Assembly (NCBI RefSeq): GCF_006345805.1
Contig: NW_021825904.1
Coordinates: 1-14,202, forward strand
Length of the DNA: 14,202 nt
From: Octopus sinensis
Taxonomy: Eukaryota
Direction: 5' to 3'
Made by a program: the position numbers and the translations under genes. Shown piece by piece: positions 1,190 to 14,202 of this stretch (positions within the stretch are counted from its first letter, which is position 1; each line of letters starts with the position of its first letter). Below the pieces are notes generated by a model. The model had not been told where the DNA came from, did not search any database, and worked only from the letters and a program-made list of their open reading frames with translations.

Positions 1190-1200
1190 GTACGTTTCCC

Positions 1201-1273
1201 CGTACACGTGGGACTCGAACCCACACATCTCTGTTTACGTGACTGAGTGCGCTACCGGTTACACTAGCGAACC
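1201..1273 (-). pseudogene. Degenerate tRNA-like sequence (tRNA pseudogene or SINE head)
   Basis: Minus: GGTTCGC TA GTGT AACCGGTA GCGC A CTCAG TCACGTAAA CAGAG ATGT GTGGG TTCGAGT CCCAC GTGTACG. Perfect T arm and B box; D stem pairs with wobbles; acceptor stem 5/7; anticodon arm has a mismatch and a 9-nt loop. Confidence 0.7.
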
Positions 1274-6970: not shown

Positions 6971-7769
6971 TGTAGCAATATTGATATCCTCGCTTTTGGA
7001 GAAAAACTTTAGGAATGATCTCGTTTGAGATTACAACCATTCATCGTCTTTCGGAAGAACAATCTATATCAAGAGAAACCTGCACAAGTGACTCAACTAG
7101 TCTCCGCTTCGAGACCTAAATCTTGTTATAGAACTTATTATCGTGTACCACATGAACTGGTAAACTAACTCTATCTTAACTCAATATGCTGAGACTTCTC
7201 TTATGCTCTGTATTTCTGTTGTATTCGCATGCACCTTTATCTGTACCTTCTGTCGCTGGTATACAACAGCGTCTTCATAGTATGGTTGGCTGGCTGTGGT
7301 CTGTCGTTCGAACAGGAACATGGCTGAGTAGCTCTGTGGTCAGTGACTATACCTTACAATATACGTTTTGTAAAGCCATGATCTGACTTTAAAACCACCT
7401 TAATTGTCCATATATCAATACGGAGAGAAAACAAAGCGACAAGATGAAACTAGTAAAAAATTACTGGATAATTCTAGATCCCGGATTTCTGACTTCGCAT
7501 TTAGGAATGCTTTGCCGAAAGACGATGAATAGTGAAAATACTAGCTTATTTAAGGAGTGAAGATGGCTCAATTGAAAGATCCTATCCGAAGGCCGTGATT
7601 GGTCAGTTTACACACTGGCGCGAAATAAGTAGAGAGACAGACCGCGCTAGATGCTAACCAATCAGATCAGTGGACACAACAGGATTAAACTAGCCAAAGA
7701 TGGTTGTAATCTCAAACGAGATCATTCCTAATGTTTTTCACCAACAGCGAGGATATCAATATTGCTACA
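6971..7769. repeat. Foldback element bounded by 70-bp inverted repeats (6971-7040 / 7700-7769), with an additional 16-bp inverted match (7039-7054 / 7515-7530)
   Basis: The 70-bp arms match at 67/70 positions by eye; attcatcgtctttcgg is the exact reverse complement of ccgaaagacgatgaat. Confidence 0.8.
7375..7516 (-). mobile_element. 142-bp fragment of the HHR element family at 10470-10942, truncated at the ribozyme core
   Basis: Near-identical to 10607-10748. Retains stem II, GAAA, stem III and the 3' strand of stem I but lacks CUGACGA. Confidence 0.85.
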
Positions 7770-8579: not shown

Positions 8580-9040
8580 ATATACATACATATGTGTGTG
8601 TATGTGCGTATATATGTGTGTGCCTGTGTGTGCCTCTGTGTGCGTGTATGTTTGTGTATGTCTGTGTATGACTGTGTGTGTATTTGTGCGGGGGTGCCTC
8701 TGTTTGTGTACCTCTCTGTGTGTATGATTGTGTGTATGTATTTGTGTGGGTGTGTGTGCCCATATGTGTATCTGTATGTATAGGGGTGTGCCTCTGTGCG
8801 TGTGTGCTTCACAGTGTGTGTTTATCTGTATGTGCAAGTGCGTGTGTGTATTTGTGTGTTCCTATGTGTGTGTATGTGTGTGTGCCTCTGTGTGTATTTG
8901 TGTGTGGGGGTGTATGCCTCTGTTTATGTGTGAATTACTGTGTGTGTGCCTTTGTGTGTATTTATGTATGGGATCTTATGCCTCTGTCTCTGTGTGTATT
9001 ATTGTGTGTGTGTATATAATATGTGTGTGTGTGTGTGTGT

Positions 9041-9074
<34 letters not shown>

Positions 9075-9172: not shown

Positions 9173-10311
9173 CTTTTCTACTCTAGGCACAAGGCCCGAA
9201 ATTTTAGGGGAGGGAGCCAGTCGATTAGATCGACCCCAGTACGCAACTGGTACTTAATTTATCGAGCCCGAAATGGATGAAAGCAAAGTCGACCTCGGCG
9301 GAATTTGAACTGAGAACGTAAAGACAGATGAACTACCTGTTTCTTTATTGCCTACAAAGGACTAAACACAGAGAGGAAAAACAAGGACAGACAAACGGAT
9401 TAAGTCGATTATATCGACCCCAGTGCGTAACTGGTACTTATTTAATCGACCCCGAAAGGATGAAAAGCAAAGTCGACCTCGGCGGAATTTGAACTGAGAA
9501 CGTAGCGGCAGACGAAATACCTATTTCTATTTCTATTTACTTTTTAAAGATGTTTTCACTGTTTTTAGCCGAACCGCTAAGTTACGGTTGCGGGACGTAA
9601 ACACACCAACACCAGTGGTCAAGCGATGGTAGTGGAGCAGGCACAAACACACACATACACAAACACACAAACACACACACACACACACACACACACATAT
9701 GATGGGCCTCTTTCAGTTTCCGTCTGCCAAATCTACTATCAAGGCTGTGCCCGGCCCGAAGCTATAGTAGAAGACACTTGCCAAATGTGCCAAGCAGTGG
9801 GACTGAACCCAGAACTATGTGGTTAGGAAGCAAACTTCTTACCACAGAGCCACGCCAATTAACATTATCACAAATAACAGATATTTATTTCTTTATTGCC
9901 CACAGGGGGCTAAACATAGAGGGGATAAACAAGGAAGGACAGACAAAGGGATTAAGTCGATTACATCGACCCAAGAGCGTAACTGGTATTTATTTAATGA
10001 CCCCCGAAAGGATGAAAGGCAAAGTCGACCTCGGCGGAATTTGAACTCGCAACGTAAAGACAGACGAAATACCTATTTCTATTCCTTTACTACCCACAAG
10101 GGGCTAAACATAGAGAGGACAAACAAGGACAGACAAACGGGTTAAGTCGATTCCATTGACCCCAGTGCGTAGCTGGTACTTATTTAATCGACCCCGAAAG
10201 GATGAAAAGCAAAGTTGACTTCGGCGGAATTTGAACTCAGAACGTAGCGGCAGACGAAATACTGCTAAGTATTTCGCCGGCGTGCTAACGTTCCTGCCAG
10301 CTCGCCACATT
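9173..10311 (-). mobile_element. Composite SINE: family C head plus 2 units (9886-10306), unique spacer, 5' part of family B (9534-9856), 2 family C units plus canonical tail (9173-9533)
   Basis: Modules recognised by alignment to other copies. Flanked by the direct repeat CAACATGAAATATATT at 9157-9172 and 10312-10327. Confidence 0.85.
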
Positions 10312-10364: not shown

Positions 10365-10466
<102 letters not shown>

Positions 10467-10469
10467 TTT

Positions 10470-10942
10470 ATATAAATAAGGATAAGATCGCTAATTTAAA
10501 AATAAAATAACGATTTTGTCAAGTGGTCAGCATGGAAAAAATAACCTTCAAAGGTAATAATTATTAAAATTATAAATTAGGGTATCTACGAGATACCACG
10601 ATAGCGGCCATGATCTGATTTTAAAACCACCTAAATTGTCCATATATCAACACGGAGAGAAAACAAAGCGACAAGATGAAACTAGTAAAAAATTACTGGA
10701 TAATTCTAGATCCCGGATTTCTGACTTAGCATTTAAGAATGCTTTGCCTCGTCAGTAGAATACACACAGAAGAGAAACATAAATACGTATACATATAAGC
10801 ACAACATACGAATACAAGTTTCATCTTGTCGCTTTGTTTTCTCTCCGTGTTGATATATGGACAATTAAAGGTGGTTTTAGAGTCAGATCATGGCTGCTAT
10901 TTTCAGCATGGTGTATCTCGTAGATACCCTAATTTATAATTT
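10470..10942. mobile_element. Asymmetric foldback element 1 with hammerhead in the spacer (probable non-autonomous Penelope-like element)
   Basis: Inverted arms at 10567-10687 and 10813-10942; the left side extends about 95 nt further; (TA)n lies on both flanks; HHR at 10703-10761. The class is inferred. Confidence 0.75.
10703..10761 (-). ncRNA. Type I hammerhead ribozyme motif
   Basis: Minus: AUUCUA CUGACGA GGC AA AGCAUU CUUA AAUGCU AA GUC A GAAA UCCGGGA UC UAGAAU. Perfect 6-bp stem I, bipartite stem II, near-palindromic stem III, AUC cleavage triplet (10711-10709), one extra A before GAAA. Confidence 0.85.
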
Positions 10943-10945
10943 ATA

Positions 10946-10988
<43 letters not shown>
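10943..10988. repeat. (TA)n microsatellite
   Basis: Direct reading. Confidence 0.95.
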
Positions 10989-10991
<3 letters not shown>

Positions 10992-11291
10992 CCTCGGGCC
11001 GACCAAAGCCCTGTGAGTGAATTTGGTAGACGGAAACGAAAGAAGCCCGTCGTATATATGTATATATATATGTATATGCGTGTGTGTGTTTGTGTGTCTG
11101 TGTTTGTCCCCCTAGCATTGCTGACAACCGATGCTGGTGTTTTTATGTCCCCGTTACTTAGCGGTTCGTCCAAAAGAGACCGATAGAATAAGTACTGGGC
11201 TTACAAAAGAATAAGTCCCGGGGTCGAGTTGCTCGATTAAAGGCGGTGCTCCAGCATGGCCGCAGTCAAATGACTGAAACAAGTAAAAGAA
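10987..11291 (+). mobile_element. 5'-truncated SINE family B
   Basis: Starts at tatagcctcgggccgacc and is colinear with 5486-5872 through the tail. Confidence 0.9.
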
Positions 11292-11574
11292 TAAAAGAAA
11301 AAAGAAAAAAAAAATATATATATATAGGTGTGTGTCTGTGTGTGTGCGTGCGTGCATTTAATGCTCACTACGATCCCCATCTGATAACCTATTCCGATAT
11401 CAGATATCTTGCTTCGGCTTGATTCTGATTCATGCCACAAGGTCAGAGAGTTGGTGCAAGCCTCAGCGAACCAAAGAATATTTCTTCGTTATTGTTGACA
11501 ATCTCCATTCTTCTTTTTATAAAAATCATACGTTTAAGAGTCAGCGACACCTTCGTCAGAAAACAGGTTGTCAG

Positions 11575-11700
11575 CCATCATATACATGAATATATATATA
11601 CATATACATACACACACGACCACACATTTATCTGTATTTGTGTGTGTGTGTATGTATATATGTATATGTATGTGTGTGCTGTGTGTGTTTGTGTTCCTAT
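11575..11700. repeat. Mixed (TA)/(CA)/(TG) microsatellite tract
   Basis: Direct reading. Confidence 0.8.
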
Positions 11701-11734
11701 TTTTAGCTAAGTTGGTGCTCCTTATTGCCCTGAT

Positions 11735-11754
11735 TATATATATAAATATATTAT

Positions 11755-11801
<47 letters not shown>

Positions 11802-11841
11802 TACTACTACTAATAATAATAATCATAATAATAATAATAAT
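11735..11841. repeat. (TA)n, (CTA)n, (TAA)n microsatellite cluster
   Basis: Direct reading. Confidence 0.9.
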
Positions 11842-12083
11842 ATAGGATAAAATTTTTTTCAGAAAAACTTTCATCAAAAGTGGCAGCATATTAAAATACC
11901 TTTAAAGGTTAAAATTACAAACAACCTATAAAGAAGGGCAAAAGAAAAACTATTTCCATGCCAATATACTGAGAACAGACTTTAAATCGTCAATTTCCAC
12001 ATTTCATTTTACATTCACTATAAATACACATCGTGCTGAAATCGAGGGAAGCTAGCTAACAGAATTTATTTTTAAAAGTTCGT

Positions 12084-12148
12084 TATTTCTAATATTGAAT
12101 CAATTTCGGGATTAATCCTATGGATTCTTTCCTCTTCAGTAGAAAATA
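12084..12148 (-). ncRNA. Type I hammerhead ribozyme motif, intact core
   Basis: Minus: UAUUUUCUA CUGAAGA GGAA AG AAUCC AUA GGAUU AA UCCC GAAA UUGAUUCAA UA U UAGAAAUA. One A-C mismatch in stem II and one extra U after the AUA triplet. Confidence 0.8.
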
Positions 12149-12285
12149 CGATAAGAGATAAATGAAATACTTACTAGCACCCATAAAAAAAGATCAAGCA
12201 AGAGTCCATGAGTACACATAAGTACACATAAGTGCATGTGCTTTTTTCGATGGGTGCTAGTAAGTATTTCATTAATTTTTTATCG

Positions 12286-12349
12286 TATTTACTACTTAAG
12301 AGGGAAGAATCCATAGGATTAATCCCGAAATTGATTCAGTATAGAAATA
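12286..12349 (+). ncRNA. Type I hammerhead ribozyme motif with mutated core (CUUAAGA)
   Basis: Plus: UAUUUACUA CUUAAGA GGGA AG AAUCC AUA GGAUU AA UCCC GAAA UUGAUUCAG UA UAGAAAUA. Perfect stem II and a GUA triplet; the G5-to-U change at 12297 should inactivate it. Confidence 0.75.
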
Positions 12350-12515
12350 ACGAACTTTTTTTTAAAAAATTCTGTTGGCTAGCTTTCCTCGATTTCAGCA
12401 CGATGTGTATCTACAGTGAATGTAAAATGAAATGTGGAAATTGACGATTTAAAGTCTGTTCTCAGCATATTGGCATGGAAATAATTTTTCTTTTGCCCTT
12501 GTTTATAAGTTGTTT

Positions 12516-12566
12516 ATATATATATATATATATATTATATGTGTGTGTGTGGTGTGTGTGTGGTGT

Positions 12567-12636
<70 letters not shown>

Positions 12637-12691: not shown

Positions 12692-13098
12692 CGAGCTGGC
12701 AGAAGCGTTAGCACGCCGGGCGAAATGCTTAGCGGTATTTCGTCTGCCGTTACGTTCTGAGTTCAAATTCCGCCGAGGTCGACTTTGCCTTTCATCCTTT
12801 CGGGGTCGATAAATTAAGTACCAGTTAAGCACTGGGGTCGATATAATCGACTTAATACCTATGTCTGTCCTTGTTTGTCCCCTCTGTGTTTAGCCCTTGT
12901 GGGTAATAAAGAAATAGGTATTTCGTCTGCGTTACGTTGTGAGTTCAAATCCCGCCGAGTCGACTTTGCCTTTCCTCCTTTCGGGGTCGATAAATTAAGT
13001 ACCAGTTACGCACTGGGGTCGATGTAATCGACTTAATACCTATGTCTGTCCTTGTTTGTCCCCTCTGTGTTTAGCCCCTTGTGGGTAATAAAGAAATA
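12692..13098 (+). mobile_element. SINE family C: head plus two ~183-bp tandem units, no canonical tail, with 13-bp target-site duplication
   Basis: Units start at 12735 and 12918 (gtatttcgtc). Direct repeat GGTGATGTGACGG at 12679-12691 and 13099-13111. Confidence 0.92.
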
Positions 13099-13226
13099 GG
13101 TGATGTGACGGTAGAAACGGGAAAATATTAATCAAATACCATGCGAAATATAATTACGCTTCTCTGCGTTTTCGGTCCAAACTCTCCAAGGTTAAAAGTG
13201 GCACAATTCATCTTTTGATCAAAGTT

Positions 13227-13712: not shown

Positions 13713-13742
13713 TTATTAAAATTATCACAAATCATAGATATT

Positions 13743-14202
13743 TATTTCTTTATTGCCCACAGGGGGCTAAACATAGAGAGGACAAACAAGGACAGACAAA
13801 GGAATTAAGTCGATTACATCGACCCAAGTGCGTAACTGGTATTTATTTAATTGACTCCCAAAAAGATGAAAGGCAAAGTCGACCTCGGCCGAATTTGAAC
13901 TCAGAACGTAAAAACTGACGAAATACCTAGTTCTTTATTACCCACAAGGGGCTAAGCACAGAGAGGACAAACAAGGATAGACAAACGGATTAAGTCGATT
14001 ATATCGACCCCAGTGCGTAACTGGTACTTATTTAATCGACCCCGAAAGGATGAAAGGCAAAGTCGACCTCGGCGGAATTTGAACTCAGAACGTAGCGGCA
14101 GACGAAATACCTTTTTTTTTTTTTTTTATTACCCACAAGGGGCTAAACACAGAGGACAAACAAGGACAGACAAACGGATTGAGTCGATTATATCGACTCC
14201 AG
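13743..14202 (-). mobile_element. SINE family C tandem array (at least 3 units of ~184 bp, continuing past the window end)
   Basis: gacgaaatac recurs at 13917 and 14101; cccacaaggggctaa starts each unit on plus. Confidence 0.9.

What the first reader, a model, noticed from the sequence alone, without database searches (positions are those of the whole stretch)
10470..12515. Candidate system: microsatellite-targeting, ribozyme-bearing foldback retroelements with a shared terminal motif
Foldbacks 1 and 2 show no evident similarity along their arms yet share five traits: (1) HHR stem I UUCUA/UAGAA with a bipartite stem II; (2) cut site about 240-250 nt from the 3' end; (3) head-to-head inversion with one arm lacking the last ~77-95 nt; (4) both ends in AT microsatellites; (5) a terminal motif AGGATAA...AAGTGG(T)CAGCAT...ACCTT.AAAGGT.A.AATTA (10479-10563 and 11844-11917). 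Inverted pLTRs with HHRs are established for Penelope-like elements. The conserved terminal motif may be the cis signal recognised by a partner RT/endonuclease; I do not know of a description of it, but cannot exclude one.
Basis: partly seen in the sequence, partly recalled or inferred. Interest (0 to 1): 0.88.

Follow-up and report, generated by a model that had tools for sequence, protein, structure and literature searches.

The report
Penelope-type ribozyme foldback retroelement insertions
Two short head-to-head repeats sitting in AT microsatellites look like old, non-coding insertions made by a Penelope-like retrotransposon, and their shared end motif matches the already described one-sided "tail" of such elements, so this is a new example of a known kind rather than a new system.

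Summary
Both foldbacks exist, with arms 95% and 92% identical. Each carries a hammerhead-like motif on the minus strand, lies inside AT microsatellites, and has one copy ending in a 75-88 nt module that the inverted copy lacks. The module is similar between the two elements (z = 6.1 against shuffles), while the bodies are not.

I found two additions. The elements also share a roughly 50-nt head that includes the 5' half of the ribozyme (z = 9.6). A third fragment of the FB1 family lies at 7375-7516.

Caveats: Rfam finds no hammerhead here, even at E <= 10. Every present copy has one defect. Helix II and III differ between the families by compensatory changes, and the inferred FB2 ancestor has canonical geometry.

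The architecture matches published signatures of Penelope-like element (PLE) insertions: a ribozyme in the pseudo-LTR, a head-to-head inverted copy, a tail on one side only, and AT-rich or (TA)n targets. The tail has been explained by two reverse-transcription start sites and priming on both DNA strands. No RT/endonuclease gene is in the window, and no cephalopod genome could be searched, so the partner and copy number are untested.

Verdict: real, a new member of a known kind, of modest interest.

The parts
10422..10478 (.). (TA)n array flanking the tail end of FB1; presumed target microsatellite, preceded by (CA)n
   Evidence: TRF row 10422-10478; sequence
10479..10566 (-). FB1 tail module (88 nt). 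In RNA sense it reads TAATAATTATT-ACCTTTGAAGGT-..-ATGCTGACCACTT-..-TTATCCT-3'. It is absent from the inverted copy.
   Evidence: Alignments; pattern and shuffle tests; nhmmer
10567..10702 (-). FB1 body of the full copy. It has no similarity to the FB2 body. A stem-loop GGTATCTCGTAGATACC lies just 5' of the proximal end.
10703..10761 (-). FB1 hammerhead-like motif: AUUCUA-CUGACGA-helix II (GGC/GUC plus GCAUU/AAUGC)-extra A-GAAA-helix III AUCCGGGAU-C17-UAGAAU. The predicted cut is at 10709|10708.
   Evidence: no Rfam hit
10762..10812 (-). FB1 sequence upstream of the ribozyme. Positions 10789..10739 are homologous to FB2 12173..12124 (the shared head module).
   Evidence: blastn 77% over 52 nt; shuffle z = 9.6
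10813..10942 (+). FB1 inverted copy. It is 5'-truncated about 21 nt downstream of the cut site and ends 11 nt before the position of the ACCTTT hairpin, so it has no tail.
10943..10990 (.). (TA)n array flanking the tail-less end of FB1
   Evidence: TRF 10942-10990
11735..11843 (.). (TA)n-(TAC)4-(TAA)n run flanking the tail end of FB2
   Evidence: TRF rows 11735-11800 and 11811-11842; sequence
11844..11918 (-). FB2 tail module (75 nt): GTAATTTTA-ACCTTTAAAGGT-..-ATGCTGCCACTT-..-TTATCCT-3'. It is absent from the inverted copy.
11919..12085 (-). FB2 body of the full copy
12086..12145 (-). FB2 hammerhead-like motif, left copy. The core is intact (CUGAAGA..GAAA), helix III is AUUGAUUCAAU, and there is one extra U between position 17 and stem I.
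12146..12200 (-). FB2 sequence upstream of the ribozyme (the head; 12173..12124 is homologous to FB1)
12201..12232 (.). Central spacer between the two FB2 copies. It contains the direct repeat GTACACATAA x2.
12233..12518 (+). FB2 inverted copy. It includes a second hammerhead remnant at 12289-12347 with G5 changed to U, but with canonical spacing and a GGG/CCC helix II base. It ends 9 nt before the hairpin position, so it has no tail.
12519..12636 (.). (TA)n then (TG)n flanking the tail-less end of FB2
   Evidence: Sequence; TRF 12540-12636; perfect TA run 12515-12534
7375..7516 (-). Third FB1-family fragment, 96.5% identical to FB1 10748..10607. It starts inside helix II of the ribozyme and lacks the CUGANGA box, the last ~40 nt of the body and the tail. 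It is embedded in a TIR-bounded element (6971-7769).
   Evidence: blastn; alignment; sequence

Best explanation
FB1 and FB2 are old, non-coding insertions made by the retrotransposition machinery of a Penelope-like element (a telomerase-like RT fused to a GIY-YIG endonuclease).

Each full unit is on the minus strand and is about 330-360 nt long. It has three parts: a conserved head (about 45 nt plus a type I hammerhead motif), a family-specific body, and a conserved 75-88 nt 3' module ending in UUAUCCU-3'.

The inferred mechanism follows the published PLE model. The ribonucleoprotein cuts both strands of an AT-rich target, here a (TA)n array. Each exposed 3'-OH then primes reverse transcription of an element RNA. 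One cDNA starts at the distal start site, the very 3' end after UUAUCCU. The other starts at a proximal start site 9-11 nt upstream of the ACCUUU.AAGGU hairpin. The two cDNAs meet 5' end to 5' end and are joined. The result is a head-to-head foldback whose two 3' ends face the microsatellite, with the tail on one side only.

On this reading the conserved tail, and probably the head, is the cis signal shared with the partner element. The hammerhead is the usual passenger or processing motif of PLE pseudo-LTRs and is now decayed in every copy.

What is shown: the anatomy, the shared modules, the microsatellite flanks and the repeat nature. What is inferred: mobilisation by a PLE protein, the two start sites, and past ribozyme activity. 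Whether these are dedicated non-autonomous families or extremely 5'-truncated copies of two autonomous PLE families is open, at roughly even odds.
For: - Foldback geometry with diverged arms (95% and 92%) rules out an assembly or read artefact.
- In both elements the inverted copy stops at the same homologous place, 11 and 9 nt 5' of the ACCTTYAAAGGT palindrome. The full copy ends at the same heptamer, TTATCCT, whose only two occurrences in that orientation are these ends.
- The tail and head modules are significantly similar and the bodies are not (z = 6.1, 9.6 and -0.6). The tail pattern occurs twice, against 0.00 expected.
- The hammerhead topology is kept between the two families. All 5 pairs of the inner helix II, 1 of 3 outer pairs and 2 of 4 helix III pairs differ on both sides yet still pair. 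Helix III is near-palindromic and helix II is long. These traits are reported for PLE min-HHRs, including pairs of motifs on opposite strands 100-700 bp apart (PMC4209133).
- Using FB1 as outgroup, three of the four differences between the two FB2 hammerhead copies (G5 to U, a stem I change, an extra U) are each private to one arm; the fourth (helix II position 10.3, A or G) cannot be polarised. With G at that position the FB2 ancestor had canonical geometry.
- All four ends lie in AT microsatellites that cover about 2.5% of the window.
- A third FB1-family fragment shows that the family is dispersed.
- The literature matches the anatomy: an inverted 5'-truncated copy plus a one-sided tail (PMC8557442; PMC3846280); the tail equals the interval between two RT start sites, both strands are cut and extended, and targets are AT-rich (PMC11167929); the Hydra clade has HHRs and inserts into (TA)n, and it occurs in Mollusca; pLTR sequences alone suffice for mobilisation in trans; octopus genomes hold recently active Penelope families (PMC13282606).
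Against: - There is no RT or GIY-YIG coding remnant in the window.
- No partner element could be fetched, so no PLE carrying this head or tail has been seen.
- Rfam covariance models give no hammerhead hit even at E <= 10.
- FB1 and copy 3 carry an extra A between helix II and G12, which does not fit the canonical core. No present copy is predicted to be fully canonical, and the MFE folds do not adopt the hammerhead.
- The tail is 75-88 nt, against the 30-40 nt reported for PLEs.
- Only two loci support the 'two start sites' regularity.
- Tail secondary structure beyond the 4-bp hairpin is not supported (z = -2.0 and -0.9).
- Copy 3 lacks the 3' end, which target-primed insertion should preserve.
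Confidence: 0.68

Rival explanations
1. HHR-bearing short retroelements of another kind: non-LTR retrozymes or Sm-alpha-like SINEs. These would be transcribed, cut by the hammerhead into unit-length RNAs (possibly circularised), and copied back by a LINE or other RT. The foldback would be incidental.
For: A type I hammerhead topology with a short, near-palindromic helix III and a unit size of about 330-360 nt fall in the range of metazoan retrozymes (PMC7229834). A (UUA)n run follows the FB2 3' end, like the simple-repeat tails of some LINE/SINE pairs.
Against: There is no head-to-tail tandem arrangement of units, so two same-strand cuts that release a unit RNA are impossible at these loci. 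ARAGORN finds no tRNA-like head in the elements. A one-sided tail and head-to-head copies are PLE signatures, not LINE/SINE ones. A 2026 preprint argues that animal retrozymes are themselves PLE derivatives, so this rival largely merges with the main explanation.
Confidence: 0.12
2. Foldback or MITE-type DNA transposons with long terminal inverted repeats that insert at TA dinucleotides. The shared 75-88 nt module would be a separate neighbouring repeat or a preferred target.
For: The long arms make up most of each element (128 of about 376 bp; 285 of 603 bp). The flanks are TA-rich, compatible with a TA duplication. A genuine TIR element nearby contains an FB1-family fragment.
Against: The units are asymmetric: one terminus carries 75-88 nt with no inverted counterpart, and in both elements it is on the same side relative to the ribozyme strand. 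The arm termini of FB1 and FB2 show only a weak 11/14 match. The conserved strand-specific head, including a hammerhead with compensatory changes, has no role in a cut-and-paste element. The module was found nowhere else in the window on its own.
Confidence: 0.08
3. Palindromes created by fold-back repair or replication errors at fragile (TA)n tracts, which duplicated in inverted orientation whatever lay next to the microsatellite. The shared motifs would reflect one older dispersed repeat.
For: AT-rich microsatellites are break-prone (established knowledge). Both palindromes abut them. FB2 is nearly symmetric around a 32-nt spacer.
Against: In both loci the inverted copy ends at the same homologous position, within about 2 nt, which a random breakpoint would give in roughly 1-2% of cases (my estimate). 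FB1 is strongly asymmetric at its centre, with 125 nt present in one copy only. This rival does not explain the conserved head and tail with differing bodies.
Confidence: 0.05

Closest known systems
Penelope-like element insertions with inverted pseudo-LTRs and a one-sided 'tail' (Penelope/Poseidon, Neptune, Hydra and Naiad clades)
   Same: A hammerhead motif near the 3' part of the unit; a head-to-head inverted, 5'-truncated second copy; an extension present at only one end; AT-rich or (TA)n targets where TSDs cannot be seen; cis sequences sufficient for mobilisation in trans (PMC3846280, PMC8557442, PMC11167929, PMC4209133).
   Different: There is no RT/GIY-YIG ORF anywhere in the window. 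The units are only about 330-360 nt. The tail is 75-88 nt rather than 30-40 nt. Sequence homology to any catalogued PLE could not be checked.
PLE minimal hammerheads (Cervera and de la Pena 2014)
   Same: Type I topology, a long helix II, a short palindromic helix III suggesting action as a dimer, high sequence variability with compensatory changes, and frequent pairs on opposite strands 100-700 bp apart.
   Different: Helix II here is two-part with an internal loop. [quoted passage not shown] Instead, FB1 has an extra A on the 3' side, before G12.
Metazoan non-LTR retrozymes
   Same: Small, AT-rich, non-coding units with a type I hammerhead. They have recently been argued to be non-autonomous PLE derivatives.
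   Different: Retrozymes are defined by head-to-tail tandem repeats that give unit-length, circularisable RNAs. These loci hold inverted copies, not tandem ones.
Non-autonomous Chlamys PLE derivatives such as MRC1 of Chlamydomonas
   Same: Short non-coding elements that share only their 3' ends with autonomous PLE families and form pLTR-like multicopy insertions, with a microsatellite bias (PMC8557442).
   Different: A different lineage with no canonical hammerhead, and head-to-tail rather than head-to-head arrangement.

Membership tests
Penelope-like element (autonomous) | A single ORF with a telomerase-like RT and a GIY-YIG endonuclease | tested here: not met
   No ORF above 202 aa. All long ORFs are low-complexity and have no RT or GIY-YIG Pfam hit. 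The loci can therefore at most be non-autonomous or truncated derivatives.
PLE-derived insertion (pLTR unit) | A second copy adjacent in tandem or inverted (head-to-head) orientation | tested here: met
   FB1 and FB2 arms, 95% and 92% identical, with the 5' ends facing each other
PLE-derived insertion (pLTR unit) | A short extension ('tail') present at only one end of the inverted pair | tested here: met
   88 nt (FB1) and 75 nt (FB2) are present only on the full copy, and the boundary falls at the same homologous position in both. This is longer than the published 30-40 bp.
PLE-derived insertion (pLTR unit) | A hammerhead motif within the repeat | tested here: inconclusive
   The core boxes, three helices and compensatory changes are present. 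There is no Rfam hit, each copy has one deviation, and cleavage is untested.
PLE-derived insertion (pLTR unit) | Insertion into AT-rich DNA or (TA)n | tested here: met
   All four ends are in AT-type microsatellites
PLE-derived insertion (pLTR unit) | Sequence shared with an autonomous PLE of the same genome | not testable with these tools
   No eukaryotic genome, Repbase or Dfam was available. The protein route found PLE proteins, but none of the 120 listed hits that carry an organism name is a cephalopod; many carry no name.
Hammerhead ribozyme (Rfam type I models) | A covariance-model score at or above gathering | tested here: not met
   No hammerhead family is listed at gathering scores or at E <= 10
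Hammerhead ribozyme (Rfam type I models) | Conserved core C3-A9 and G12-A14, H17, and helices joined without extra nucleotides | tested here: inconclusive
   The core is intact in FB1 and FB2-left. FB2-right has G5 changed to U, FB1 has an extra A before G12, and FB2-left has an extra U after position 17. The inferred FB2 ancestor is canonical.
Non-LTR retrozyme | Head-to-tail tandem repeats of 170-400 bp, each with a hammerhead | tested here: not met
   TRF and the repeat finder show no direct repeats of the units
Non-LTR retrozyme | Unit-length linear and circular RNAs | not testable with these tools
   No transcriptome data
MITE / foldback DNA transposon | Inverted repeats at both termini and a fixed target-site duplication | tested here: not met
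   One terminus carries 75-88 nt with no inverted counterpart. TSDs cannot be read in microsatellite flanks.
tRNA-derived SINE | A tRNA-like head with Pol III boxes | tested here: not met
   ARAGORN finds nothing in 10479-12518

The most novel reading that the evidence does not exclude
The roughly 50-nt head (with the hammerhead) and the 75-88 nt tail form a minimal portable cis-cassette for a (TA)n-specific cephalopod PLE. This cassette has mobilised at least two unrelated bodies in trans. The two edges of the tail would mark two reverse-transcription start sites more than 70 nt apart, about twice the spacing known from other PLEs, with the ACCUUUAAAGGU hairpin and the AUGCUGCCACUU block as the protein-binding determinants.
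Probability: 0.3. Interest if true: 0.5.

Novelty: new member of a known kind. Interest (0 to 1): 0.3.

Why it matters
If these are short elements mobilised in trans, they show naturally which RNA parts a PLE protein needs: a head with the ribozyme and a tail bounded by two initiation sites. PLE mechanism is still poorly understood, with only one in vitro system published in 2024, so such minimal substrates would be handy test RNAs. For genome annotation, these foldbacks are likely to be misfiled as MITEs or hairpin microRNA-like loci. They also add to the evidence that (TA)n arrays are PLE landing sites. Beyond that, the finding is an ordinary repeat feature.

Tried and rejected
- Rfam at gathering scores and at E <= 10 gave no hammerhead. 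The only hits were microRNA-like false positives on TA/CA palindromes.
- A third descriptor hit at 11564..11460 has no head or tail similarity and weak stems, so I treated it as chance.
- The metagenome scan for the tail pattern returned one contig, L001. It has no ribozyme on the right strand, no TTATCCT end and no microsatellite, so I judged it a chance match.
- The scan of 596 Gb of prokaryotic genomes gave 0 matches.
- I tried to reach the source genome through spurious ORFs. An exact look-up and a homology search for the FB2 ORF, and a homology search for a SINE ORF, all returned nothing.
- I tried to reach a cephalopod PLE with the N-terminal part of the published Poseidon_Ac protein. 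This returned 1591 PLE proteins; of the 120 listed, none that carries an organism name is a cephalopod and many carry no name, so I did not pursue it.
- Supplementary sequences of the Naiad/Hydra paper are not held.
- A coding reading of the tail gives MLPL.. after the conserved ATG, but it is too short and AT-biased to mean anything.
- Conserved tail structure beyond the 4-bp hairpin is not supported.
I scanned the ten longest ORFs instead.
Full report
**What is there**

The stretch 10422-12636 holds two palindrome-like elements, each bracketed by AT-type microsatellites.

- FB1 has arms 10687..10567 (minus strand) and 10813..10943 (plus strand). They are 95% identical, with an 8-nt indel.
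- FB2 has arms 12200..11916 and 12233..12518. They are 92% identical.

The divergence between the arms rules out a sequencing or assembly palindrome artefact and indicates old insertions.

In both elements the minus-strand copy continues beyond its arm for a further 88 nt (FB1, 10566..10479) or 75 nt (FB2, 11918..11844). The plus-strand copy runs straight into (TA)n instead.

**The shared modules**

The two extra segments are similar to each other. The pattern AAGTGG(N)CAGCAT..ACCTTYAAAGGT matches exactly twice in the window, against 0.00 expected. Their local alignment score is 36, against a mean of 18.3 (sd 2.9) for dinucleotide shuffles, and none of 2000 shuffles reached it.

Read on the minus strand, the module is:

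- TAATT.T.-ACCTTT.AAGGT, a 12-nt near-palindrome;
- ATGCTG(A)CCACTT;
- a variable stretch;
- TTATCCT-3', followed by (TA)n or (TTA)n.

In that orientation, the heptamer TTATCCT occurs in the window only at these two ends.

The inverted copies stop 11 nt (FB1) and 9 nt (FB2) upstream of the palindrome, which is the same homologous place.

The bodies are unrelated (z = -0.6).

The units therefore have a conserved head, a family-specific body and a conserved tail.

**The hammerhead**

Both heads carry, on the minus strand:

- stem I, UUCUA/UAGAA, extendable to 6 bp;
- the CUGANGA box;
- a long two-part helix II;
- the GAAA box;
- a short near-palindromic helix III (AUCCGGGAU in FB1, AUUGAUUCAAU in FB2);
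- an H at position 17.

A loose descriptor of my own found three such sites in the window against 0.3 expected. The third site has none of the other shared features.

In a hand alignment:

- all five pairs of the inner helix II differ on both sides between the families yet still pair;
- one of three outer helix II pairs does the same;
- two of four helix III pairs do the same.

Long helix II, palindromic helix III, heavy covariation and pairs of motifs on opposite strands a few hundred bp apart are what Cervera and de la Pena reported for the minimal hammerheads of Penelope-like elements (PMC4209133).

Against this:

- Rfam lists no hammerhead, even at E <= 10.
- The minimum-energy folds are not the hammerhead fold.
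- Every copy deviates. FB1, and the fragment at 7471-7516, have an extra A between helix II and G12. The left FB2 copy has an extra U after position 17. The right FB2 copy (12289-12347) has G5 changed to U.

With FB1 as outgroup, three of the four FB2 differences are private to one arm; the fourth, at helix II position 10.3, cannot be polarised. With G at that position the FB2 ancestor had canonical spacing and a GGG/CCC helix II base. I conclude that a hammerhead of the PLE type was ancestrally present. Present-day activity is doubtful and untested.

**A third copy**

A 142-nt fragment at 7516..7375 is 96.5% identical to FB1 10748..10607. It begins inside helix II, lacks the CUGANGA box, and lacks the 3' 128 nt, including the tail. 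It lies inside an element of about 800 bp with 70-nt terminal inverted repeats (6971-7040 / 7700-7769).

This shows that the FB1 body is a dispersed repeat. Why the fragment lacks a 3' end is unexplained. It may be a rearranged or captured piece.

**What it most likely is**

The anatomy coincides point by point with published descriptions of Penelope-like element insertions:

- A unit is often accompanied by an inverted, 5'-truncated copy placed head-to-head. A 30-40 bp 'tail' is present at only one end (PMC8557442; PMC3846280).
- Hammerheads sit in the pseudo-LTRs (PMC4209133).
- Targets are AT-rich, and for several clades they are (TA)n. The Hydra clade combines canonical hammerheads with (TA)n insertion and occurs in Mollusca (PMC8557442).
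- pLTR sequences alone can carry unrelated DNA in trans.
- Non-autonomous derivatives share only their 3' ends with autonomous families.
- Biochemistry on the anole Poseidon element showed that the protein cuts and extends both DNA strands. Reverse transcription starts at two adjacent internal sites, and the tail is the interval between them (PMC11167929).

Applied here, two target-primed reverse transcriptions at a break in (TA)n would give exactly the observed structure. One would start after UUAUCCU-3' and the other 9-11 nt upstream of the ACCUUU hairpin. The structure is two copies with 3' ends facing the microsatellite, joined 5' to 5', with the tail on one side only.

The anatomy is shown. 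The mechanism is inferred by analogy. Octopus genomes are reported to hold recently active Penelope families (PMC13282606), but I could not confirm the species or find a partner element.

**What could not be done**

- The window has no RT or GIY-YIG remnant.
- None of the searchable DNA collections holds cephalopod genomes.
- The tail pattern gave one probably fortuitous metagenome contig and nothing in prokaryotic genomes.
- Spurious ORFs from FB2 and from the local SINE have no counterpart in the protein collection.
- A PLE protein query returned no identifiable cephalopod entry among the 120 hits listed.

Copy number, the distribution of 3' ends, and the existence of an autonomous element with this head and tail therefore remain open. 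For the same reason I cannot say whether FB1 and FB2 are dedicated non-autonomous families or extreme 5' truncations of two autonomous families.

**Rivals**

- A retrozyme or SINE-like reading fails the defining tandem arrangement and the tRNA-like head. It largely merges with the PLE reading anyway.
- A MITE or foldback transposon reading is contradicted by the one-sided 75-88 nt extension and by the strand-specific conserved head.
- Fold-back repair at fragile (TA)n does not explain why both inverted copies end at the same homologous position.

**Verdict**

The interpretation as a Penelope-type retroelement signature is the best one. The 'terminal motif' corresponds to the known PLE tail, here unusually long and conserved between two families. 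This is a new member of a known kind, of modest interest.

Noticed in passing
window 6971-7769: An element of about 800 bp with 70-nt terminal inverted repeats (6971-7040 / 7700-7769, 96%). The repeat homology resumes at 7036-7064 against 7505-7533, so the right repeat seems split by a ~166-bp insert (7534-7699). The interior holds the FB1-family fragment 7375-7516. Possible flanking AGGC duplication.
   Followed up: partly
window 9267-9537, 9886-10262, 12734-13101, 13738-14202: SINE-like units of ~185-190 bp occur as tandem dimers. The inverted pair 10101-10278 / 12719-12896 (89%) brackets the whole FB1-FB2 cluster.
   Followed up: no
window 1724, 2332, 3630, 9684, 13541 (plus strand); ~5535 and ~11040 (inverted): Another dispersed repeat with the core CGACGGGCTTCTTTC(A/C)GTTTC always abuts a (TA)n/(CA)n run. 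Many AT microsatellites here may therefore be tails of that repeat, and so the landing sites of the foldbacks.
   Followed up: no
window 1200-1273, minus strand: ARAGORN calls a tRNA-Thr (anticodon CGU). It could be a real gene or a tRNA-derived repeat head.
   Followed up: no
window 11580-11680: A TA/CA-rich imperfect palindrome gives Rfam E-value hits to mir-3149, mir-568 and mir-1277 on both strands, all far below gathering scores. These are false positives.
   Followed up: yes
window 10597..10581 (minus) and 11956..11937 (minus): In both foldbacks a stem-loop lies just 5' of the proximal end: FB1 GGTATCTCGTAGATACC, FB2 GGCA..TGCC. It is followed by CCCT..TTTATA (11 of 14 identical). This may belong to the initiation region, but the evidence is weak.
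   Followed up: partly
window 8593-9073: A long degenerate TG-rich minisatellite with a 64-nt higher-order unit (8863-9012).
   Followed up: no
L001 1053-1088 (JGI contig Ga0056123_1062892): The single metagenome match to the tail pattern. The surrounding sequence has no microsatellite, no TTATCCT end and no hammerhead on the appropriate strand, so it is probably chance.
   Followed up: yes
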